From Iphione sp. A-MEVVRFRX5 (lineage: Eukaryota), in the NCBI GenBank assembly GCA_976226885.1, contig OZ320321.1, positions 27,962,001 to 28,026,000 on the forward strand: DNA of 64,000 nucleotides, in the 5' to 3' direction. Below the pieces are notes generated by a model, which was not told the DNA's origin, searched no databases, and saw nothing but the letters and a program-made list of their open reading frames with translations. Shown here one piece after another: positions 1-15,089 of this stretch (the first letter of the stretch is position 1; each line of letters opens with the position of its first letter). Both the position numbers and the translations under genes were made by a program.

Positions 1-477
1 TGTATTCCTATGTTTGTAAAATGATCATTTAGGTGATTGGCCAGCTGTACGGTGTCCGTGACCATGTTTCCCTGTATGCTGAGTTTGGTGATTGTGGTGT
101 CATCTGACTTCTTGCTAGGTAGTAAGGTTTTCAATTGTTTCCAGTATTTCTGTGGTTCATGTTTGTATCGTTGGAGTTTACTTGTGATGTACTTGCGCTT
201 TGCTTGTCTAATTACTGAGTTTAGTTTGTTTTGGACTTTCTTTGCTTGTTGTAGTGTGTTGTTGTCTCATTTAGTTCTGTAGTATATTGAGTTGATTGCT
301 ATTAATAGTGCTATTAAGCCATGTTTCTGTTATGCATAGTATATCAATATTATTGTGGGCAAGCTCAGCTTGCAGAAGATCTACCTTATTTTTCAGACTT
401 CTGATATTGGCATGGACTATATTTAGTCCACGTTTGTTCAATTCATTCACATCTGATAGTACAGTGTTTGTTGTCAT
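1..477 (-). pseudogene. ORF2 of LINE copy A: endonuclease N-terminus fused by an internal deletion to the EN-RT linker, with frameshift and in-frame TGA
   Basis: MTTNTVLSDVNELNKRGLNIVHANIRS...ETWL aligns to the ORF2-B start. From 281 downward another frame reads YRTK*DNNTLQQAKKVQNKLNSVIRQAKRKYITSKLQRYKHEPQKYWKQLK, aligning to ORF2-B residues 328 onward; stop at 267-269. Confidence 0.88.
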
Positions 478-1050: not shown

Positions 1051-1914
1051 CTAGTTTTCCATTCCTTCAGTGAACAGAATAGCAGGACTGGTCTGGGTGA
1101 GTTTCACAAAGACCATGCCGTTGAGAGTCCAGGCTCCTGCAAATCTGCCTGACTTTACAAGCATTCTTGCTTTGTAATACTTCACTCGATTTGTCTCTGA
1201 CAGATCCTCGTTAAGGTACACTCCCCTAGCTACCCTTCCCAGAGTTGTTCTCTTTGCATAGACCTGCTGCTTTAAACTCTCTCTAAGGAAAGATACATAT
1301 AATGGCCTGGTCTTATTAGCTTCTTTCTTACCTATTCTGTAAACGTGATCGAAATCTTCATTTTTAACCTGTGTATCGAGACCCAGTTTGTTGAGTATTG
1401 TAGTTAGTCCTTCAACGTCAGGTTGTTGGGTCTCAGGTATCCCTACAATTTTGAGTGCCTTATTTCTAGCCCTGTTCTCAAGTTCTTCTGTCCTACTAAC
1501 TGTGCTAATGGTATTATTGGTGACGTCCACCATTTGGGTTTCAACCGCTTCAAGTCTGTCGTCAAAGTGGTTGAACATTTCCTGTCTTGTTGTCCTTATT
1601 GCCTTATCAATGATTCTCTCCAGTTCATGTTTGCTAGTCGAGATGGTGGACATTCTTGAGACTGTAGTGTTCATAGATGCACTCGATTCACTAGCAGTTG
1701 CCTTGGGTGAGGATGTTGGGGATGTTGAGGTGCCAGGTGTAGGCTCTTGTTCATGTGTGGTGGATTCACTAGCCTTGGAGTCACTGGCAGGCTTTTTCCC
1801 TTCAATTTCCTCCTTGGTGAAGCCATGGAAGGAGGACGTCGAAGAGTCACTGGATGCGCTGGGCTTCCTTGTGGGTGTCTTAGCCTTTTTCGGTTTAAAA
1901 ACCTTGAGTGGCAT
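1051..1914 (-). CDS. LINE ORF1 protein (L1-ORF1p/Transposase_22-like coiled coil, RRM, CTD), copy A
   Basis: Open frame; first ATG at 1914 (the track start at 1944 is TTG). Motifs LKIVGIPE, YRIG, RPLYVSF, VYLNEDLS, AWTLNG; Ser/Thr-rich disordered N-terminus. Confidence 0.88.
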   Translation of the reverse strand: MPLKVFKPKKAKTPTRKPSASSDSSTSSFHGFTKEEIEGKKPASDSKASESTTHEQEPTPGTSTSPTSSPKATASESSASMNTTVSRMSTISTSKHELERIIDKAIRTTRQEMFNHFDDRLEAVETQMVDVTNNTISTVSRTEELENRARNKALKIVGIPETQQPDVEGLTTILNKLGLDTQVKNEDFDHVYRIGKKEANKTRPLYVSFLRESLKQQVYAKRTTLGRVARGVYLNEDLSETNRVKYYKARMLVKSGRFAGAWTLNGMVFVKLTQTSPAILFTEGMEN

Positions 1915-2261: not shown

Positions 2262-2692
2262 CCACGTTAGAGGAGGCAGTTATTGAACATTCTCTCTCAG
2301 TCGCCCCTTACAGAGAGTACCGCCTATAAGAATCTAGGTGATATTTTTTTTTTTTTTATTTCGGTAATTTCTACAACAACATAACTTCAGCCACTTGGCT
2401 GGTCTTCAGTTTGCTGCTGGTGAATTTGAGAGTATACAATCTTTTATGGATATAGAGTACTTTATACAATGTTTATCTACATTTCACTATGTATTTGCTA
2501 TATACAATTATAAATATAATATTTCGTATTTTGACACACACATTCGATACTGGTGAATTTTGCATTTTCAACATAACATAATATATCCTTTTGAGTTATA
2601 TATATCCGTTAAGTACAATAAGAAAAAAGAATATATATTACTATTTGTATCACACTTCTAGATCACATTTGTGCCTTTATACCTGGTAGATT

Positions 2693-5596
2693 TTAAACCA
2701 ATTCCAATAAGCTTTTCAAGTTAATAGATAATTCTCGCCATTGTCTCACTATATCTTTTTTGAAAATGAATATATTTTCATAGTCTCTTGAATACAGTTT
2801 GCTCGAATTCCACAATTTTACAACTCTTGAGTATGAAGTCTTCAATATAGGTCCTTTCACTTTGTTTATATTGTCAAATGGATCACTTATATGGTCACGC
2901 AGGTCATATACCACTTGCTTTTCTTTATAAGTACTGTTCAAATATCCTGGTAGTTGTTTATGTGCTGCTCTATAACCATGCATTAATAGATGCAATCGTA
3001 TCCTGTCTTGAACTAACATAATATTTGCTAGTTCATGCACTTCTGCAGTTGGGGTCATATGATTCAGTACAAGTGCATTTTTAATAACTCTATTTTGACA
3101 CTTCTGAATTTGCTTTAGCTGTTTCATTGTGACATTTGACCATATCGTGTCCATATAGTCTATATGTGGTATAAACAACATTTTGATTAACATTAATTTT
3201 ATATCTCTTGGAAACCATTTATTACATTTGGATAATAGCATCATTTGTATGTGGAGTTTCTTTAATAGTTGTTGAACATGAAATTTAAAATTTAGTTTGT
3301 TATCCAAATATAGTCCTAAATACTTATATACGTTAACACATTGAATTGGTGATCCATTTAACATTACAGGAGTAGTTAGTTGCACATTTCTATTATTCGG
3401 TGTTACAAGCATATATTGCGTTTTTGATATATTTAAAGAGAGTGAATTACTACACATCCAATTGAAAATTTTTGTTAACTTATTGGTTGCTACAGAACAT
3501 AGTGTACTGGGGTCCTTATGTTGGATAATTAAAACTGTGTCATCCGCATACATCGAAAAAGTATCAGGACTTAAAATATTTGATAAATCATTTATAAACA
3601 ATATAAATAATATTGGTCCCAAAACACTTCCTTGGGGGACACCAATTCGTACATCACAAGAACTTGTAGATATCTCCATGCCAATTTTTGTTTTTTGGGT
3701 TCTAAGATTTAAATAATTTTGAAGAAGTTTATATGCTCTACCTCTGAAGCCATACACATGTAATTTTTTCATTATCTGTGCATGCTGAATAGTATCGAAT
3801 GCTTTTGATATATCAAGGAAAATGGGCATGGAATATAGTTTAGCATCTTTATTTTCTAGCAACCGATTTACCACATATTGTGCCATATAAGAGGTGCTAT
3901 ACCCCGCTCTATAACCCCCTTGATAATCTGTTAATATTTTACTGTAATTTAGATATTTCATCATACGTACGTGTATAATCTTTTCTATAATCTTATGAAA
4001 TAAGCACAAAACAGAAATTGGTCTATAATTGCTCATATCAGTTGCATCCCCATTTTTATAGAGAGGAGTAACTAAAGCACATTTCCAGGCTATTGGAATA
4101 TATGATTCATTAATTATTCTGTTATAGAAGTTCACCAGGCCTTCTGATAGTCCCTTCTTAATATCTTTAATCAGTTTCATTGGGACCATTTTTAAGCCTG
4201 TTGGTTTGCTGTTTGACATTTTGCTTATAATGTTTTCTATTTCTAATGGGGTTGTGTATTCCAATTTGGAAAAAATATTCTTTGATGGTATTATACTCTC
4301 AGGACTATTCTGTTTAGGGATGGTTTGACTTAAATTAATTCCAATAGTTGCAAAGTGTGTATTCATACAATTTGCAATATTCTGTGCTCCAGTTACTTTC
4401 TTTCCATTGTCTCTTATTTCATATATTTCGATTCCTGTTTTAGTCTTTGAAGGAACAACTTCTTTCAACAATTTCCAATATTCTCCTGGTTCATTTTTAA
4501 CTGTTTTCAATTTTTCTCTGAAATATGCTTGTCTTGATGATCGTAATTTTGAATTAAAGATATTTCTTGCAGTTTTGTAATTGCTATGAGATTCATTACA
4601 CCTTTTTGATGTGTATTCTTTCAAAAAGCCATTTTTTCTTTTTTGTAATTCAATCAAATCCTTTGTCAGCCATTTCGGCATGTTGATTGGTATCTTTTTC
4701 TTAACTATTGGGATGTTATCATTAATTGCAGTGGTAATTATTGAATTAATTCTGGACCATGTCTCATCAATTTCTTCATCCTCGTTAATTTCTAATAACT
4801 TTTCTTTAATTGTGGTGTTAATTGAAGCAGGAGAATATTGTTTATAGTCTCTACATGAAACATGTTTGTATTCAGGCTTTTTGTGATACATCTTACGCTT
4901 TGCAAAGATCCACCTATGATCAGATAGAGTATTTTCTATGACTCCATGTGTTGCATATTTTTCTGGGTTTGTGGTCAAGAACAGATCAATTATTGTCGCT
5001 GACTTTTCAGTTTTTCTAGTTGGTAAGTCTATGACATTTTTCATTCCATTAACTCTTTCAAAAGTTTTAAGTGACTTATATTGATTTGTTCTTGTGTTGC
5101 AATAATCAACATTAAAATCACCCATAATGACAATCTCTTTGTGGTTTGTTTTACAATCATCCATAATCTTATGAAGTCTATCAAAAAATGCAACACTGTT
5201 TCCATCAGGTGGTCGATAGATTAATAGTAATAACATACGAACATATTTTGATTGTAAAGTACATGTTATACATTCAATATCACTATTGGATATACAATAC
5301 GAGTGATTTATATTTACCGTGATATTACATGTCTTTTTTACGTAAAGTAGTAAGCCTCCACCTCTTGTTCGTTTTCCAAGGTGTCTATTGAGCCTAAAAA
5401 TACTATAATTGTTAATTTCGACCATATTATCCATTATTTCCTTTTTTAACCATGTTTCAGTTATTCCAATTATATCAATGTTCTGATAGCATAGATCCAT
5501 TTGTAATTCTGGCAGTTTAGGTAAAACGCTTCTAATATTCAAATGAGCAAAATTTATACCTCTTTTGTTAATATTTTGTATATCAGATAATTGCAT
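2693..5596 (-). CDS. LINE ORF2: AP-like endonuclease plus reverse transcriptase
   Basis: APE motifs NIRS, ETWL, IYRPP, GDFN, IDLFL, SDH; RT motifs YRPIS, DISKAFD, PQGSVLGP, YADD, YKYLG; uninterrupted 967 aa; no C-terminal zinc knuckle seen. Confidence 0.97.
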   Translation of the reverse strand: MQLSDIQNINKRGINFAHLNIRSVLPKLPELQMDLCYQNIDIIGITETWLKKEIMDNMVEINNYSIFRLNRHLGKRTRGGGLLLYVKKTCNITVNINHSYCISNSDIECITCTLQSKYVRMLLLLIYRPPDGNSVAFFDRLHKIMDDCKTNHKEIVIMGDFNVDYCNTRTNQYKSLKTFERVNGMKNVIDLPTRKTEKSATIIDLFLTTNPEKYATHGVIENTLSDHRWIFAKRKMYHKKPEYKHVSCRDYKQYSPASINTTIKEKLLEINEDEEIDETWSRINSIITTAINDNIPIVKKKIPINMPKWLTKDLIELQKRKNGFLKEYTSKRCNESHSNYKTARNIFNSKLRSSRQAYFREKLKTVKNEPGEYWKLLKEVVPSKTKTGIEIYEIRDNGKKVTGAQNIANCMNTHFATIGINLSQTIPKQNSPESIIPSKNIFSKLEYTTPLEIENIISKMSNSKPTGLKMVPMKLIKDIKKGLSEGLVNFYNRIINESYIPIAWKCALVTPLYKNGDATDMSNYRPISVLCLFHKIIEKIIHVRMMKYLNYSKILTDYQGGYRAGYSTSYMAQYVVNRLLENKDAKLYSMPIFLDISKAFDTIQHAQIMKKLHVYGFRGRAYKLLQNYLNLRTQKTKIGMEISTSSCDVRIGVPQGSVLGPILFILFINDLSNILSPDTFSMYADDTVLIIQHKDPSTLCSVATNKLTKIFNWMCSNSLSLNISKTQYMLVTPNNRNVQLTTPVMLNGSPIQCVNVYKYLGLYLDNKLNFKFHVQQLLKKLHIQMMLLSKCNKWFPRDIKLMLIKMLFIPHIDYMDTIWSNVTMKQLKQIQKCQNRVIKNALVLNHMTPTAEVHELANIMLVQDRIRLHLLMHGYRAAHKQLPGYLNSTYKEKQVVYDLRDHISDPFDNINKVKGPILKTSYSRVVKLWNSSKLYSRDYENIFIFKKDIVRQWRELSINLKSLLELV

Positions 5597-6182
5597 TATA
5601 ATTAATGTAATAGATTTTTAACAAATGTACATAAGTTTCTACTATATTCGGGCACTTCTTTGATAATTTTTGTATCATTACTGTTGAAAGCAAATAAGCA
5701 CTCAGAAGAGTGATGATGAGAGACAAGAAAATCAAGTATAGCTCGCTCTCGTAAATTTTGTTTTTACTACCGATTGATCGTAAAATACATTGTGGCGCTA
5801 TCTGGTGTTATTACGACAATTTACATCGCCACAGGAAGTTACGTAGTTTGTATTACGTCATTACGTCATTTCATATGTTGCGTAAAGCATCGTTATATCA
5901 CTATGACAACTACTGTCAACAATATGTAACAGAGTGATACTTTTGCTCTATATTAGATCACTTCATAGGATTAGTATAAAAGAAAACAATTTCTGAAGAA
6001 AATTACAATAGCTGGAAAATAGTACAAGCAATTAAATTGTTATGCGAATTCACCAGCAGCAGTATACCGAGTTGTCTCGTTACGTAAATCTTTTGAAACA
6101 ACAAAATAGCTATAAAGTTGAGAGTTACATTGTCATATATATTACTGGTTAAATGTTACACGAGCAAACATTGTCATATACA

Positions 6183-7103
6183 TTACTGGTTAAATGTTAC
6201 ACGAGCAAACAAATCTGCAGGTGCGTTTTCAACAACCTTGCAATATACCTGGCCATTACTTGTCCATGCAGAATGCAACCTGCCTGCCTTAACATCTGCT
6301 CTTGCCAAGAAGTAGAGGTTACGATTGTCATTGCTAAGGTCCTCATTGATATAGACATTTCTTCTCAGCTTGGATAGGCTTGTTCTTTTTCCATATATTT
6401 GTTGTTTCTGATATTCTCGAAGTAATGTTATGTAGATAGGTCGAGGTCTCGTCTCTCCTGGGGTGAACTTGCCCACTCGGTACAGCATATCGATGTCGGC
6501 AGCTACTACTTCTGGACTGATCTTCATATCACGGAAGAGTTTCAGCACTTCATTTCCATCTTCAGCGCCTCGTTCTGGAATCCCAAAAATCCTCAGTCCA
6601 CGATTACGAATTTGTTGTTCAACTTGTGCTACCCTTGATCTTGCTTCTTTCACTTCAACTTGCACCTTCTGCGCTGATTTCTTCACTTCATCAAGATTCC
6701 CCATCGTGTTCTCTACTGCCGTAGAAACTGCTTCATTCACCGCTTCGTTCACTGTAGTCGAGATGGAATTCTTGAACGATTCACTTGCAATGAACTTCTC
6801 CATCACACGATCAACTTGGGTTTCCCACAAATTGTCCTTGACATCATGTTGTTGAGTTGTACTGCACCCTGGTGTTACCATTACTGATGTTGAGGATTGT
6901 GATGATGCTGTCTCCGTTTTCGAGTTGGACTCAGCTACATCTTCGTTCCGTTGTCGATCAATTCCTGGTGCTTCGACTGGAGTACTCTGATGAACTATCT
7001 TCATCATCTCTCTGGCTTCTTCTTGTTTGGCCTGAAGTTTCTCTGATTTCTGCACCTCATCACTTGAAAAACCGTGAAACGACTCCTCTGAGCTGCTCTC
7101 CAT
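6183..7103 (-). CDS. LINE ORF1 protein (coiled coil, RRM, CTD), copy B
   Basis: 306 aa with LRIFGIPE, YRVG, RPIYITL, VYINEDLS, AWTSNG; clearly homologous to ORF1 of copy A. Confidence 0.92.
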   Translation of the reverse strand: MESSSEESFHGFSSDEVQKSEKLQAKQEEAREMMKIVHQSTPVEAPGIDRQRNEDVAESNSKTETASSQSSTSVMVTPGCSTTQQHDVKDNLWETQVDRVMEKFIASESFKNSISTTVNEAVNEAVSTAVENTMGNLDEVKKSAQKVQVEVKEARSRVAQVEQQIRNRGLRIFGIPERGAEDGNEVLKLFRDMKISPEVVAADIDMLYRVGKFTPGETRPRPIYITLLREYQKQQIYGKRTSLSKLRRNVYINEDLSNDNRNLYFLARADVKAGRLHSAWTSNGQVYCKVVENAPADLFARVTFNQ

Positions 7104-7353: not shown

Positions 7354-7371
7354 CCGCGCATGCGCAGAACT
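7354..7371. promoter_or_regulatory. NRF1-type motif at the 5' end of LINE copy B
   Basis: CCGCGCATGCGCAGAACT, identical to 2244-2261. Confidence 0.55.
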
Positions 7372-8110: not shown

Positions 8111-9002
8111 TGCTGTGAGAGACTTACCTGACATCACATGATCTGAACAAGTATTTTTGTACACTTGGAAATGTTTTTAATGTGAGGGTAAACATCAGCC
8201 GCGTCGAACGCAAAGATCTGGTTGCCTTTGCTTCAAGTTACCTTTTACATGAAGCCAGTAACTCGAGCCCACAACCCCCCCCCCCCCCACGACCACCCAC
8301 CACCAGGTTGTTTTCGCTGACATTATCAACGATCCACATTTATCTTTCAAAAGAAGACTGAAATCTGACTTCAAATACATATACACCATCATCCACTGAC
8401 GAACCGACAATAACGACATAGCGCCCCACCTGGCGGCGGGGGGTGGAGGAAAGCACTAAAACTCTTTGGAAACTTTTCACCTGACGTTCGAGCAACTTGG
8501 GGCTCCCTCCCTCCCCCCCCCCCTCCATCTCTCGGGGATGAGTGCCTTTTTGCGACATTTATCAAACAGTATATACAAATGGCGGGCGGGTGCGGGCTTC
8601 TACTAATGATTCACGGGGAGGGGATCGATGCTAACCGCAGAACGAGGAGAAGTCGAAGCCCGCCGTCCGTCTCCGCGTATTTCGATAGCGTAATGAGACG
8701 GAATCAAAGCCGCATATGGTCGTGAGTGGTATAAAGGGGTTACCCATGTCACACTGTAGATCAGTAGGAGAAAAACAGACTCCTGGGGGTTGGGGGAGAG
8801 GAGGAGGGGAAGCTTCAAAGGAGACGGGACCCGTTTAGGTAATTGGGAGCTGGCATCTCTTGGTGCTGGTTTTCCTCCGCCTCGGATCGACCCCGGCTGC
8901 CTGAGAGGCAAAAGAAGACGGAAAGTCACTCTCGGTGCGTTCAGGGTGCTCGATGACGTATGAATATATACGTGCGCGTGCATGTGTGCGTGCGGGCATG
9001 CC

Positions 9003-9004
<2 letters not shown>

Positions 9005-9050
<46 letters not shown>
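9005..9050. repeat. (TG)n microsatellite
   Basis: Directly visible. Confidence 0.98.
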
Positions 9051-9052
<2 letters not shown>

Positions 9053-10339
9053 GTGTGCGCGCGCGCATGTGGGGATGGATTTGTGCATGTACGTACCTTT
9101 GCCTGTGTGTAAGTGTGTGTGTGTGTGCCTGTATATGCGCCCTACCTGGCATGATCAACGTCGCTCCCCCCCTCCCACCACAGCCCCTCTCCCTCCCACA
9201 GACACATCCCATCTCTGATCTGTCACCATGGAGGAAGTATGGACCCGACCCATACGGTAATGTCGCCGACGACGACTGACTCGAGCTGACTAAGCAATTT
9301 TCCTCGTCCAATAACTCTTGGTAGCGGGGAATCTCCCGGCCTGACCCCCTCCACCCACACTGCTTAGTTTCCGTTTGCTGCCTAAGAATTTTCCTCCTGG
9401 TTTACCTTGTGTATACCTCCCTGACGTCAGAGGACGGTCGTCAGCGTTCCTTACTCTCACCATATGCAAATATATCCCTTAGAACGAAGGAAACGTCTGT
9501 ATCGAAAAAAATTTATGGCCTGAGGCCACTTTTTGCCGAACGGTTTTCTTTAGAAATGATTGGAAAACGGAAAGAAGCAATACAAACATATACACCTACA
9601 AGGATATAATTGAGGATATATAAATTCCCAGTCCAGATGAAGTGGGAACACATGAAAAACACTCCTGAAATAATAATAATATACCTCCCAGAGATTTCAA
9701 GGAGCACATCTACTTTGCTAACAGAGTTATACCTATTTGAATGTAAAATGCACTCTTCACACAGCGTTCTGCTCTGATCTCAAACTGACACCTACTTTCC
9801 TTATTTGCCTTGGCTCGCGTCGACAAGACTAACACGGAGGACAAATATAGCAAAACAGTGCTTCCAGGTAAAGGCCATATATGCATGCCCCCTTATCAAA
9901 ACGGTGTATGCAGGTGAGCAGGATCTGAGCCCAAATGTTTAGGAGACCCCCCCGCCCCTCCCCCCAACCAGTTTTGCAATAACAACAGTACTTAGGGGCA
10001 GGGAACTCTTCCCCTCCTCTTTCAAGGTTTGACGATCAGATGATGTTGAATAGTGCAGAAAATATGCAGACCGTAATTGGTGAATTTCATCATTTTTTGT
10101 CGCAGTCCCAGAGAATATATGGTAGAAAAAGTATTTCAATGGAAAACAAACTTTTCAAAAAATTGGTGGAAATGAACAATCACTTTTGAAAATTTCCATA
10201 TGACTTGTACATTTTCCAGAATGCAAAGAAATTATTTACGATCATATGAGAGTTATTATAATCATAGAAAGATATATATTTATATATATGGACACAAAGA
10301 CATGGAAGAATCAGCTCGAACTGTTTATGATCAGTACTC

Positions 10340-13144: not shown

Positions 13145-15089
13145 TTTTTTTTCTTTATTTGCAACAGAACACATCATCAACCCGAAGGCTGTTATCCTGC
13201 TGGCCTGCCTATCTTGTTGGTTAATAGGGTTAATATATTAGTATGTCTAGCTAACAGGCTGATTGCCATATTCAGTAAATAGGTGTTACATAGACTTGCA
13301 GAATACAGTAATATTGTCGATAATGTAGTTAAAATGCTATAAATGGGGCCTGTTACTTGAGTTGTTAGGATATTAATCGCCAAGTACAGGGCTTTCTTTT
13401 GTTTCAATAATAACTATAATAACAATGGATATTATTATCAAACATTTAACCCCTTCCAGACTGGCCATAGGCTTATCGGCCATATTTGGCAGTTAAGCCT
13501 ATAGACACTTCAGCTGCAGCTAATGTAACATATGAATCATAATTTCCTAGGTACATGGAAAATACAAGTCCTAAGAAGTATCAAACAGATTACTAGATCA
13601 AAATTAACAAAATTGCATTATGGGTAACTAATGTGAGGATTATGTCACTTTTACATAAATTATGGGCTAGCTAATAGGAAAAGTCAACATAAATCACAGC
13701 TATTAGTATTTCTTTGCAAATAGTGAACTACATTACAGTTTTGGAAAAATCTTTATAATCCATCATAATAGCCTACTAACTTGTTTAGTTTGAATTACTT
13801 TTAGAAAGATTTCTTCACTAATTATTTTGGCAATGCTGAAAACATTTTCAATCCAATAACTTATTTGGGGCAAGTTTGGGCATATGCAAGTGATAGTATC
13901 ATATCTTATCATATACTAGGCACACTACATGCATTGTGTTAGTAGATTGAATATTAAACTATTCTTTTGTAAATTCACATAAAACCTCTCTACTGACTTT
14001 CCTGGTCTAAAAATAATTTTGTAGTCATTTCTCTTTTAAAATCTGCTATAGAATCATAATCGTACCTTAACAACTTCTCTTTATCCCATATGTCTATAAA
14101 TTCATATGAAATGGTTCTTCTTGTCTGCCTTGTGTGTACATTCATTTCAGGATAATTGAAAAGTCCATATTTATTCCCTCTCAGATCGTAGGCTGCTTCT
14201 TTCAGAGTGAAAAAACTTTGATAAAAATCAGGGTAGATTCCTACAGAAGCCTTATATTCAGCAATAAGATAATGTAATTTAATCCCCCTGTTTACTGTCA
14301 TTATTTTTCTATCTTTATGCAACCTAATAGTATTATATCTTCTATCCAATCTACATGCTCTTTTTAAAATATCATTCTGTATTCTTTGCAATTGTTCAAG
14401 TTACTTATCTGCACTTCGTGACCAAATCAAATCACAGTAATCTAAGTGTGGTCTAAACAAACTTTTGAAAAGCATTAAATTAGTTTTTACATCCAGATAT
14501 TTGTATACAACTCTAAGTTGATAACACACCTTCTGTGACATAGATATTATATGCTGTATATGCAGCTTGTATGTTAACCACTCATCCATTATAACTCCAA
14601 GATATCTATAATAAGATACTCTTGTTATAGTCTTGTTATCTACTTTTATTTGGAGATTACTATTTATAATATTCGCATTAATAGTCTTATTAGGGAAGCA
14701 TAACATATATTTCGTTTTATCAATATTCATAGATAACTTGCTGTAATTCATCCAGTCCTTTATATTGGCTAACTCTCTGTTAGTTTCTTTAAAGATTTCT
14801 GTTATTTCCATCCCGGAGACACAGATTCCTGTGTCATCTGCATATGTCAATAAATAATTTTTAACTATTAGACTCATAGAATTAATGTACAGAATAAATA
14901 ATATCGGACCCAGTACCGATCCCTGTGGCACTCCTATTCTAACGTCAGATGTACTAGACAGGTAATTATCAATTTTAGCTCTCTGTGTAAATCCCCAGTT
15001 ATGCCAATCGATTCTAGTTTAACTAACAATTTTGCATGGTCTACTGTATCAAAAGCTTTTGACACGTCTATGTACGTTATTAGACTATA
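13145..15089 (-). mobile_element. 5'-truncated, decayed CR1/L2-group LINE (copy C) inserted into the 51-bp satellite
   Basis: Poly-T at 13145-13152; RT remnant YSLITYIDVSKAFD...PQGSVLGPILF...YADD...YRYLG; C-terminus homologous to ORF2-B; in-frame TAA at ~14401; small deletion and frameshift at ~14960-14985. Confidence 0.92.
13450..13925. mobile_element. Probable piggyBac-like MITE fragment inside the 3'UTR of LINE C
   Basis: TTAA at 13446-13449 followed by CCCCTTCCAGAC, nearly identical to the left end of the element at 48455. No right TIR found, so the right boundary is a guess. Removing it leaves a 3'UTR close in size to that of LINE B. Confidence 0.5.

What the first reader, a model, noticed from the sequence alone, without database searches (positions are those of the whole stretch)
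7056..7103. Conserved Ser/acidic FxGF motif in LINE ORF1p N-termini: candidate LEDGF/TND-binding tether
Seen: ORF1-B begins MESSSEESFHGFSSDEV (FHGF at 7068-7079) and ORF1-A contains SSASSDSSTSSFHGFTKEEIE (FHGF at 1819-1830). The surrounding disordered N-termini do not align, yet SFHGF is identical. All five codons differ at the third position (TCG TTT CAC GGT TTT vs TCC TTC CAT GGC TTC), which points to selection on the peptide. Established: acidic/phospho-Ser plus FxGF ([E/D]xExFxGF) is the motif by which MLL1, JPO2/CDCA7L, IWS1 and the domesticated transposase PogZ bind the LEDGF integrase-binding domain and related TFIIS N-terminal domains, and HIV integrase uses the same LEDGF domain for targeting. 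Inference: this LINE family may tether its RNP to transcription-elongation or H3K36me chromatin factors through ORF1p. I am not aware of this being described for non-LTR elements.
Basis: partly seen in the sequence, partly recalled or inferred. Interest (0 to 1): 0.85.

Follow-up and report, generated by a model that had tools for sequence, protein, structure and literature searches.

The report
Conserved FxGF motif in LINE ORF1p
A family of jumping genes (LINEs) in this animal genome has kept a short Ser-rich "FxGF" peptide at the start of its RNA-binding coat protein through a very old radiation. The peptide resembles the docking tag that cell proteins use to bind the chromatin reader LEDGF, but no binding has been shown.

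Summary
Both ORF1 proteins lie on the minus strand (ORF1-B 6183-7103, ORF1-A 1051-1914) and carry SFHGF with all five codons differing at the third base. In the whole genome, 47 of 49 non-redundant intact ORF1 relatives (27-80% identical) have one F-x-G-[FY] in the first 70 residues, against 0.3 expected from shuffles. It sits in a ~20-residue block, S-S-[SD]-S-x-x-S-F-x-G-F-T-x-E-[ED]-[IV]-x-x-[AS]-[EQ]. Synonymous codons are used freely. Non-synonymous change is 0.01 at F/G/F and 0.10 across the block, against 0.28 in the next linker. The selection therefore acts on the peptide.

The protein is an L1-type ORF1p (coiled coil, RRM, CTD). The motif lies in a low-confidence N-terminal tail just before a predicted helix.

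The LEDGF/TND reading is plausible but unproven. FxGF is the hallmark of LEDGF-IBD ligands, and the host has an IBD orthologue. However, the acidic consensus positions are mostly Ser, and ORF1-B has no room for the upstream helix of a canonical TIM. I estimate about 0.35 for IBD binding.

I found no paper describing this, and the scan's notes on this genome held no earlier finding of it.

The parts
7041..7100 (-). Conserved ~20-residue motif block of ORF1-B (residues 2-21, positions -7 to +12 around F9): Ser/acidic run, FHGF, then S-S-D-E-V..S-E
   Evidence: Anchored column statistics over 47 lineages. pN is 0.10 here against 0.28 in the following linker.
7068..7079 (-). FHGF core of ORF1-B (residues 9-12)
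   Evidence: F and G are invariant and the second F is F in 45 and Y in 2 of 47. Codons are TTT 24 / TTC 23, all four Gly codons, and TTT 23 / TTC 22.
6999..7064 (-). Predicted helix directly after FxGF (ORF1-B residues 14-35). Only its first two turns are conserved: T/S at +4, E/D at +7, I/V at +8, A/S at +11, E/Q at +12.
   Evidence: AlphaFold2 model with alignment A1: helix 14-35, with block-mean pLDDT 83-86 over residues 11-30. Column statistics.
6183..7103 (-). ORF1-B, 306 aa. L1-type ORF1p: N-terminal motif, low-confidence linker (38-89), coiled coil (91-166), RRM and CTD (170-304).
   Evidence: The best Foldseek matches are the human LINE-1 ORF1p trimer 2yko/2ykp/2ykq. No Pfam hit.
2693..5596 (-). 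ORF2 of element B (967 aa): AP-endonuclease plus reverse transcriptase
   Evidence: Pfam RVT_1 3.6e-32, Exo_endo_phos_2 1.7e-10, Exo_endo_phos 3.3e-07.
2341..2362 (-). AATAAA and an A-run marking the likely 3' end of element B
   Evidence: Read directly.
1792..1851 (-). The same motif block in ORF1-A (residues 22-41): S-S-D-S-S-T-S-S-F-H-G-F-T-K-E-E-I-E
   Evidence: FHGF lies at 1819-1830.
1879..1914 (-). N-terminal basic element of ORF1-A (MPLKVFKPKKAK). Most lineages share it, but the ORF1-B subgroup lacks it.
   Evidence: Alignment A1 and N-termini listed. pN before the motif is 0.12.
1051..1914 (-). ORF1-A, 287 aa from its ATG. Intact, and 33% identical to ORF1-B.

Best explanation
The FxGF block is a short linear peptide motif under purifying selection in the N-terminal tail of an L1-type ORF1 protein. 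That part is shown. It was present at the base of an old LINE radiation in this genome and has been kept in nearly every surviving lineage.

I infer that it is a docking site for a host protein. The best candidate is the FxGF-reading pocket of the integrase-binding domain (a TFIIS-N-terminal-type domain) of the host's LEDGF/HRP2 orthologue. In this model the flanking Ser/Thr residues, which fit the casein kinase 2 site pattern, supply negative charge for the domain's basic patch. The ORF1p trimer would present three copies, so weak single-site binding could add up. The outcome would be tethering of the LINE particle to H3K36-methylated, transcribed chromatin, or recruitment of elongation factors to the element.

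Confidence that it is a selected peptide motif is about 0.9. Confidence that the partner is a LEDGF-type IBD or another TND is about 0.35, and that is the number given below.
For: Motif conservation:
- 47 of 49 lineages carry it, against 0.31 expected.
- F, G and F/Y are near-invariant while the x position takes at least 6 different residues. All synonymous codons are used.
- pN is 0.01 at F/G/F, 0.10 in the block, 0.28 in the next linker and 0.097 in RRM+CTD, from 33 independent pairs.

Phylogeny:
- On a tree built from the C-terminal 200 residues, without the motif columns, the own-genome clade has SH-aLRT 100 and 30 of 32 rows carry the motif.
- The ORF1-B subgroup, which lost the N-terminal basic segment, is nested inside that clade and still keeps the block.
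- A second clade of five ORF1p from other samples carries [ST]-F-x-G-F-[TSNP] (T, S or N in four). A hydrophobic [LI]-x-[LIN]-F lies 7-9 Ser/Thr/acidic residues upstream in three of the five (P0012, P0023, P0036), which is the canonical helix-linker-FxGF spacing.

Literature:
- FxGF is essential in all known LEDGF/HRP2 TND ligands, and their linkers are phosphorylated by CK2 (PMC9987994).
- The consensus is D/E-x-E-x-F-x-G-F, and an 8-residue MLL1 FxGF peptide alone competes for the IBD (PMC8022399).
- The FxGF-IBD pairing holds from fly (JIL-1 with JASPer) to human (PMC6877644).

Host reader:
- The host has a LEDGF-type IBD (PF11467, 40.5 and 31.8 bits).
- Its last exon aligns to human LEDGF residues 403-448.

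Fit of ORF1-B itself: it reads S-E-E-S-F-H-G-F, with Glu at -2, and S3-S5 are followed by E6 and E7.
Against: - No binding data exist.
- Across the clade the acidic consensus positions are not kept. Position -4 is Ser in 39 of 47 and -2 is Glu in 11 of 47. Conserved instead are Ser at -1 and a downstream T-x-E-[ED]-[IV]-x-x-A-E turn that is not part of the published motif.
- ORF1-B has only 8 residues before FxGF, so the 'obligate' upstream helix of a TIM cannot exist there.
- In most other lineages the upstream hydrophobic MPLKVF lies 21-30 residues away, across a Lys-rich rather than acidic stretch.
- A profile of the motif did not retrieve the solved IBD-ligand fusion chains from the PDB.
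- Most ORF1p relatives elsewhere lack the motif: 144 of the best 150.
Confidence: 0.35

Rival explanations
1. The block docks a host protein that is not a TFIIS-N-terminal-type domain. FxGF plus the immediately following helix turn would form one compact recognition unit for a so-far unlinked reader.
For: The conserved residues extend downstream (T at +4, E/D at +7, I/V at +8, A/S at +11, E/Q at +12). That is a feature absent from the published IBD motif. The published acidic positions -2 and -4 are not conserved. ORF1-B cannot form the upstream helix.
Against: In the searchable literature FxGF as a binding motif appears only with LEDGF/TND domains. From memory I checked the LC3-interaction, FFAT, gamma-ear, G3BP FGDF and PP2A-B56 patterns, and none fits F-x-G-F with a free x and a fixed Gly.
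Confidence: 0.3
2. The block acts inside the LINE particle. The FxGF staple and short helix would pack against ORF1p's own coiled coil, RRM or CTD, against a neighbouring trimer, or against ORF2p, and so tune assembly or RNA binding.
For: AlphaFold2 gives the segment after FxGF a confident helix (block-mean pLDDT 83-86 over residues 11-30). The block's pN (0.10) equals that of the folded domains. N-terminal regions of ORF1p are known to affect assembly in mammalian L1 (own knowledge, not checked here).
Against: The block is separated from the coiled coil by a 50-150 residue linker of highly variable length that does not align. Two lineages lost the motif yet keep intact ORFs (L016, L058). No co-varying surface was identified.
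Confidence: 0.2
3. The Ser cluster and Thr at +4 are the functional part: a phosphorylation switch or degron controlling ORF1p stability or localisation. FxGF would only be a kinase or ligase docking determinant.
For: Ser at -7, -6, -4 and -1 and Thr/Ser at +4 are highly conserved. T/S(+4)-x-x-E/D(+7) fits the minimal CK2 pattern in 42 of 47 lineages.
Against: The most invariant positions are F, G and F, not the Ser residues. This reading overlaps with, rather than excludes, phospho-regulated docking.
Confidence: 0.1
4. The conservation acts on the nucleic acid (an RNA structure, a translation start context or an internal promoter), not on the peptide.
For: The block lies within 100 nt of the start codon in the ORF1-B subgroup.
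Against: Third positions are randomised (TTT/TTC about 1:1, all four Gly, four Thr and four Ser TCN codons). pS is about 0.7 while pN at F/G/F is 0.01. The block lies 8 to 50 residues from the start in different lineages.
Confidence: 0.02

Closest known systems
IBD-binding motifs / TND-interacting motifs of MLL1 (KMT2A), JPO2/CDCA7L, POGZ, IWS1, ASK/DBF4, MED1 and Drosophila JIL-1
   Same: An F-x-G-F core with a free x, in a disordered Ser/Thr/acidic context with CK2-type sites. Acidic residues follow the core (JIL-1 reads DFxGFDE). A transposase-derived protein (POGZ) is among the known carriers.
   Different: Conserved flanks are Ser at -4 and -1 rather than D/E at -4 and E at -2. ORF1-B has no upstream helix. 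There is a conserved downstream T-x-E-[ED]-[IV]-x-x-A-E turn. The carrier is a LINE ORF1p, and binding is untested.
HIV-1 integrase with LEDGF/p75 IBD (lentiviral tethering to H3K36me3 chromatin)
   Same: If the reading holds, a retroelement would use the same host domain, at a site overlapping the FxGF pocket (PMC8022399), to reach transcribed chromatin.
   Different: Integrase binds through a folded catalytic-core dimer, not a linear motif. Here the candidate is the RNA-binding coat protein of a non-LTR element that integrates by target-primed reverse transcription.
Dictyostelium TRE5-A ORF1 protein with TFIIIB
   Same: A non-LTR retrotransposon ORF1 protein contacting a host chromatin or transcription factor, linked to integration site choice (PMC5911963).
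   Different: Different host factor (Pol III machinery), no defined short motif, and experimentally supported, whereas this case is not.
Human LINE-1 ORF1p
   Same: Same fold order: disordered N-terminus, trimeric coiled coil, RRM, CTD (Foldseek 2yko, E 4.7e-06).
   Different: About 14% identity, no Pfam Transposase_22 hit, and the human N-terminus has no FxGF (own knowledge).

Membership tests
LEDGF/HRP2 IBD-binding motif (D/E-x-E-x-F-x-G-F) | F-x-G-F core with both aromatic positions kept | tested here: met
   47 of 49 lineages. F 47/47, G 47/47, and F 45 or Y 2 of 47.
LEDGF/HRP2 IBD-binding motif (D/E-x-E-x-F-x-G-F) | Acidic residues at -4 and -2 (consensus from PMC8022399) | tested here: inconclusive
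   ORF1-B has Ser at -4 and Glu at -2. Across the clade, -4 is Ser in 39 of 47 and -2 is Glu in 11 of 47. The feature is met only if phospho-Ser substitutes for the acidic residues.
LEDGF/HRP2 IBD-binding motif (D/E-x-E-x-F-x-G-F) | Flanks phosphorylated by casein kinase 2 | not testable with these tools
   Sequence pattern only. S3-S5 of ORF1-B are followed by E6 and E7, and T/S(+4)-x-x-E/D(+7) holds in 42 of 47 lineages.
LEDGF/HRP2 IBD-binding motif (D/E-x-E-x-F-x-G-F) | Direct, FxGF-dependent binding to the IBD | not testable with these tools
   The one complex-prediction job gave no verdict, so there is no evidence either way.
TND-interacting motif (TIM) | Obligate alpha-helix with hydrophobic anchors, 8-16 acidic residues N-terminal of FxGF (PMC9987994) | tested here: not met
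   ORF1-B starts 8 residues before FxGF, with a stop codon 5 codons upstream of the ATG. In most other lineages MPLKVF lies 21-30 residues upstream across a Lys-rich stretch. Three of the five external-clade proteins (P0012, P0023, P0036) have [LI]-x-[LIN]-F 7-9 residues upstream.
TND-interacting motif (TIM) | The host encodes the reader domain | tested here: met
   PF11467 matches over the cut-off at G000:C10:31339058-31339699, in exons with canonical splice sites. The last exon aligns to human LEDGF 403-448.
L1-type ORF1p (coiled coil, RRM, CTD) | Fold and domain order | tested here: met
   AlphaFold2 model. The top 11 Foldseek matches are all human LINE-1 ORF1p structures.
L1-type ORF1p (coiled coil, RRM, CTD) | Match to Pfam Transposase_22 | tested here: not met
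   No Pfam family at E <= 0.01 except a sub-threshold DUF. Atlas neighbours include clusters named L1 RBD-like.
   No RT tree was made. Element B ends with AATAAA and 13 A, which is not the usual CR1/L2 tail (own knowledge).

The most novel reading that the evidence does not exclude
A whole LINE clade uses an N-terminal FxGF peptide on its trimeric ORF1 protein to dock onto the host LEDGF/HRP2-type integrase-binding domain. This would be the first non-LTR retrotransposon found to copy the cellular FxGF tag and to converge on the lentiviral strategy of tethering to H3K36-methylated, transcribed chromatin. The two natural loss-of-motif lineages in the same genome would serve as built-in controls.
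Probability: 0.3. Interest if true: 0.85.

Novelty: new variant of a known kind. Interest (0 to 1): 0.62.

Why it matters
How non-LTR retrotransposons choose where to land, and which host factors their ORF1 proteins touch, is poorly understood outside a few site-specific elements. Here a sharply defined motif has been kept through an old radiation, down to 27% protein identity, and it marks a testable contact point. If the partner is the LEDGF-type reader, LINEs and lentiviruses would have converged on the same host hub. The FxGF tag of POGZ, a transposase-derived protein, would then gain a living parallel. If the partner is something else, the motif still gives a handle: a 20-residue bait with an obvious F-to-A control for finding a new ORF1p cofactor.

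Tried and rejected
Tests that gave no usable result:
- Complex prediction. The host IBD could only be given as three separate exon translations (23, 34 and 45 aa) plus ORF1-B residues 1-40. The verdict was 'no answer' (score 0.13, mark 0.34). This is not evidence either way.
- PDB search with ORF1-B residues 1-40: nothing.
- PDB search with the 47-sequence motif profile A2: only chance-level GFT-x-EI matches, and the IBD-ligand fusion chains were not retrieved.
- The word-indexed protein search found 2 and then 11 weak ORF1 relatives. For the IBD exon it found only exon-sized fragments, so no full-length IBD protein id was available.
- Cluster look-up and contig look-up of the external motif-bearing proteins gave no organism names.
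- Sequencing-run search: none was listed.
- Atlas search with the N-terminal 36 residues: no usable hit.
- Tesina 2015, Sharma 2018 and Cermakova 2021 are not held. The motif definitions were taken from two reviews instead.

Readings rejected:
- Conservation at the nucleic-acid level.
- A chance match.
- LC3-interaction, FFAT, gamma-ear, G3BP-FGDF, PP2A-B56, BRCT and PP1 RVxF patterns. I compared these from memory only and none fits.

I took no contig for human and met no N runs.

Full report
THE OBSERVATION. The finding lies on the minus strand. ORF1-B (6183-7103, 306 aa) begins MESSSEESFHGFSSDEV, with FHGF at 7068-7079. ORF1-A is listed from a TTG at 1944, but its ATG is at 1914, and it contains SSDSSTSSFHGFTKEEIE with FHGF at 1819-1830. 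The proteins are 33% identical, mostly in the C-terminal half.

THE ELEMENTS. ORF1-B is followed, after a 586-base spacer, by a 967-aa ORF2 with AP-endonuclease and reverse-transcriptase domains (2693-5596). After that come AATAAA and 13 A at about 2341-2362. ORF1-A belongs to a second element just downstream on the same strand. That element's ORF2 start is visible near 477, but it is interrupted.

WHAT THE PROTEIN IS. Pfam finds nothing in either ORF1. An AlphaFold2 model built on 21 diverse relatives gave mean pLDDT 74. It shows:
- residues 1-13 extended, including FHGF;
- a confident helix at 14-35;
- a low-confidence stretch at 38-89;
- long helices at 91-166;
- an alpha/beta domain pair at 170-304.
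The best eleven Foldseek matches in the PDB are all human LINE-1 ORF1p structures, starting with the trimer 2yko at E 4.7e-06. Language-model neighbours include clusters named L1 RBD-like. So this is a distant L1-type ORF1p: coiled coil, RRM, CTD. I did not test the CR1/L2 label. The A-rich tail does not suggest it.

HOW CONSERVED THE MOTIF IS. A six-frame search of the window's own 1.18-Gb genome gave 129 scored ORF1 relatives at 30-78% identity to ORF1-B, beside its own copy, most of them with open frames. I fetched 90 of these.
- 76 are intact and full length, and 49 remain after removing pairs over 80% identical. Pairwise identity among those 49 goes down to 27%.
- 47 of the 49 have exactly one F-x-G-[FY] within the first 70 residues and none later. 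Shuffling those 70 residues gives 0.31 on average and never more than 3.
- Anchored on the first Phe, the conserved block runs from -7 to +12: S, S, S/D, S, x, x, S, F, x, G, F, T, x, E, E/D, I/V, x, x, A/S, E/Q. Its middle x takes at least 6 different residues.
- Outside the block, the region between it and the coiled coil does not align and varies widely in length, by up to about 60 residues among the 21 aligned sequences.

THE CONSTRAINT IS ON THE PEPTIDE. At the invariant positions the synonymous codons are used almost evenly: TTT 24 / TTC 23; GGC 18, GGT 17, GGA 7, GGG 5; TTT 23 / TTC 22; four Thr and four Ser codons. I made Nei-Gojobori counts on 33 phylogenetically independent pairs. 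Synonymous differences are saturated everywhere (pS about 0.7), so absolute dN/dS values are not reliable. Non-synonymous differences are:
- 0.01 at F, G and F;
- 0.10 over the block;
- 0.28 in the following linker;
- 0.097 in RRM+CTD.
The block is as constrained as the folded domains. A degenerate DNA pattern for F-x-G-F-T-x-x-[DE]-[IV] occurs 388 times in the genome, against 131 for the reversed control.

PHYLOGENY. I built a maximum-likelihood tree on the C-terminal 200 residues, so the motif columns were not used. It placed all own-genome lineages in one clade (SH-aLRT 100), and 30 of its 32 rows carry the motif.
- There are two losses. L016 is nested deep and reads SFESF. L058 is near the base and reads SFDVV.
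- The ORF1-B subgroup has the motif at residues 9-12 and is nested among lineages that start MP[LI]K[VL]FK-x-KK-x-K and carry the motif at residues 28-40. ORF1-B therefore looks like a derived form that lost the basic N-terminal segment but kept the FxGF block. This argues that the block works on its own.

OUTSIDE THIS GENOME. A profile search of 1.84 billion representative proteins found 12,841 ORF1p-like proteins.
- Among the best 150, six have F-x-G-[FY] in the first 130 residues. Five of these share a Ser/Thr/acidic context and read [ST]-F-x-G-F-[TSNP], with T, S or N in four.
- Those five form their own clade (SH-aLRT 93), separate from the own-genome clade. At least four changes of state are needed on the tree.
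- Their organisms are unknown. They come from JGI and Logan contigs.
- In three of the five (P0012, P0023, P0036) a hydrophobic [LI]-x-[LIN]-F lies 7-9 Ser/Thr/acidic residues upstream of FxGF.

COMPARISON WITH THE KNOWN MOTIF. According to the TND review (PMC9987994), a TND-interacting motif has three parts: an obligate alpha-helix with hydrophobic anchors, an acidic, often CK2-phosphorylated linker of 8-16 residues, and an optional FxGF. All known LEDGF and HRP2 ligands carry the FxGF, and it is essential for them. A second review (PMC8022399) gives the consensus D/E-x-E-x-F-x-G-F. It describes MLL1's helix (IBM1, residues 123-134) and FxGF (IBM2, residues 147-152), and reports that an 8-residue MLL1 FxGF peptide competes for the IBD. 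It also notes that the integrase site overlaps the FxGF site. The fly kinase JIL-1 binds the LEDGF domain of JASPer through DFxGFDE (PMC6877644).

Measured against this:
- The FxGF core is met.
- The Ser/acidic, CK2-like flanks are met at the sequence level.
- The acidic positions -4 and -2 are mostly Ser or variable.
- The upstream helix is impossible in ORF1-B, because a stop lies 5 codons before the ATG. It is doubtful in the MPLKVF lineages, where the element lies 21-30 residues away across a Lys-rich stretch.
- Helix-linker-FxGF spacing is plausible only in three proteins of the external clade.
- The conserved downstream turn is not part of the published motif.

THE HOST READER. The genome encodes a LEDGF-type IBD. 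Pfam PF11467 matches of 40.5 and 31.8 bits lie on contig 10, in three phase-0 exons with canonical splice sites. The last exon aligns to human LEDGF residues 403-448. The run KK-C-RK-Y-K stands in the place of the human KK-I-RR-F-K; the first three host residues come from my exon join and the human ones from memory. That this run is the basic patch is also from my own knowledge.

WHAT COULD NOT BE SHOWN. I obtained no evidence on binding. Full-text searches found no paper that connects FxGF, LEDGF or TNDs with LINE ORF1 proteins. The nearest precedent for ORF1p contacting a host chromatin factor is Dictyostelium TRE5-A ORF1 with TFIIIB (PMC5911963). The scan's own notes on this genome hold nothing on FxGF.

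VERDICT. This is an ancient, strongly selected, roughly 20-residue linear motif with an invariant FxGF core at the N-terminus of an L1-type ORF1p clade. The inference of peptide-level selection is right. The LEDGF/TND tether is the best available hypothesis, because FxGF has no other documented reader and the host has the domain. However, the motif departs from the canonical architecture, and nothing here tests binding. My estimates are:
- about 0.35 for an IBD/TND partner;
- 0.3 for another host partner;
- 0.2 for a role inside the particle;
- 0.1 for a mainly phospho-regulatory role.

Noticed in passing
window 1879-1914 (-); L022-L090 N-termini: Most ORF1p lineages of this clade start with a second conserved element, MP[LI][KRN][VLK]F[KS]-x-KK-x-K. 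It looks like a nuclear localisation signal and is under constraint (pN 0.12). The ORF1-B subgroup lacks it.
   Followed up: partly
proteins P0020, P0070, P0112, P0113, P0121, P0132, P0136: Other ORF1p clades in public data carry a different recurring N-terminal peptide, roughly KR[ED]L[ST]SPE[DE]...KKN[KR]. Clade-specific short motifs in ORF1p N-termini may therefore be common.
   Followed up: no
window 7354-7371 and 2244-2261: Both elements share the 18-mer AGTTCTGCGCATGCGCGG (minus strand) in their 5' regions, as another first-stage note says. It contains the palindrome GCGCATGCGC.
   Followed up: partly
window 2262-2362: The A-rich 3' end of element B lies only about 80-100 bases upstream of the 5' region of element A, in the same orientation. 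One LINE has landed next to another's presumed promoter. This is a single case.
   Followed up: no
window 5597-6182 and about 478-1050: Both elements have long ORF1-ORF2 spacers of about 580 bases. In the one frame I translated (5597-6200), stops are frequent.
   Followed up: partly
window 1-477 (-): ORF2 of element A starts near 477 (MTTNTVLSDVNELNKRGLN...). It runs into a stop after about 70 codons, and the sequence that follows appears to resume in a later part of ORF2. Element A is therefore broken although its ORF1 is intact.
   Followed up: partly
G000:C10:31338477-31339700 (L091:920-2139): Host LEDGF/HRP2-type IBD gene. Three consecutive phase-0 exons with canonical splice sites encode the five-helix domain.
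   Followed up: partly
window 8603-9311: An (AC)n microsatellite produces several spurious His-Thr or Cys-Val open frames on both strands.
   Followed up: no
window 13990-14931 (-): Two adjacent open frames hold a reverse-transcriptase fragment of another LINE copy.
   Followed up: no
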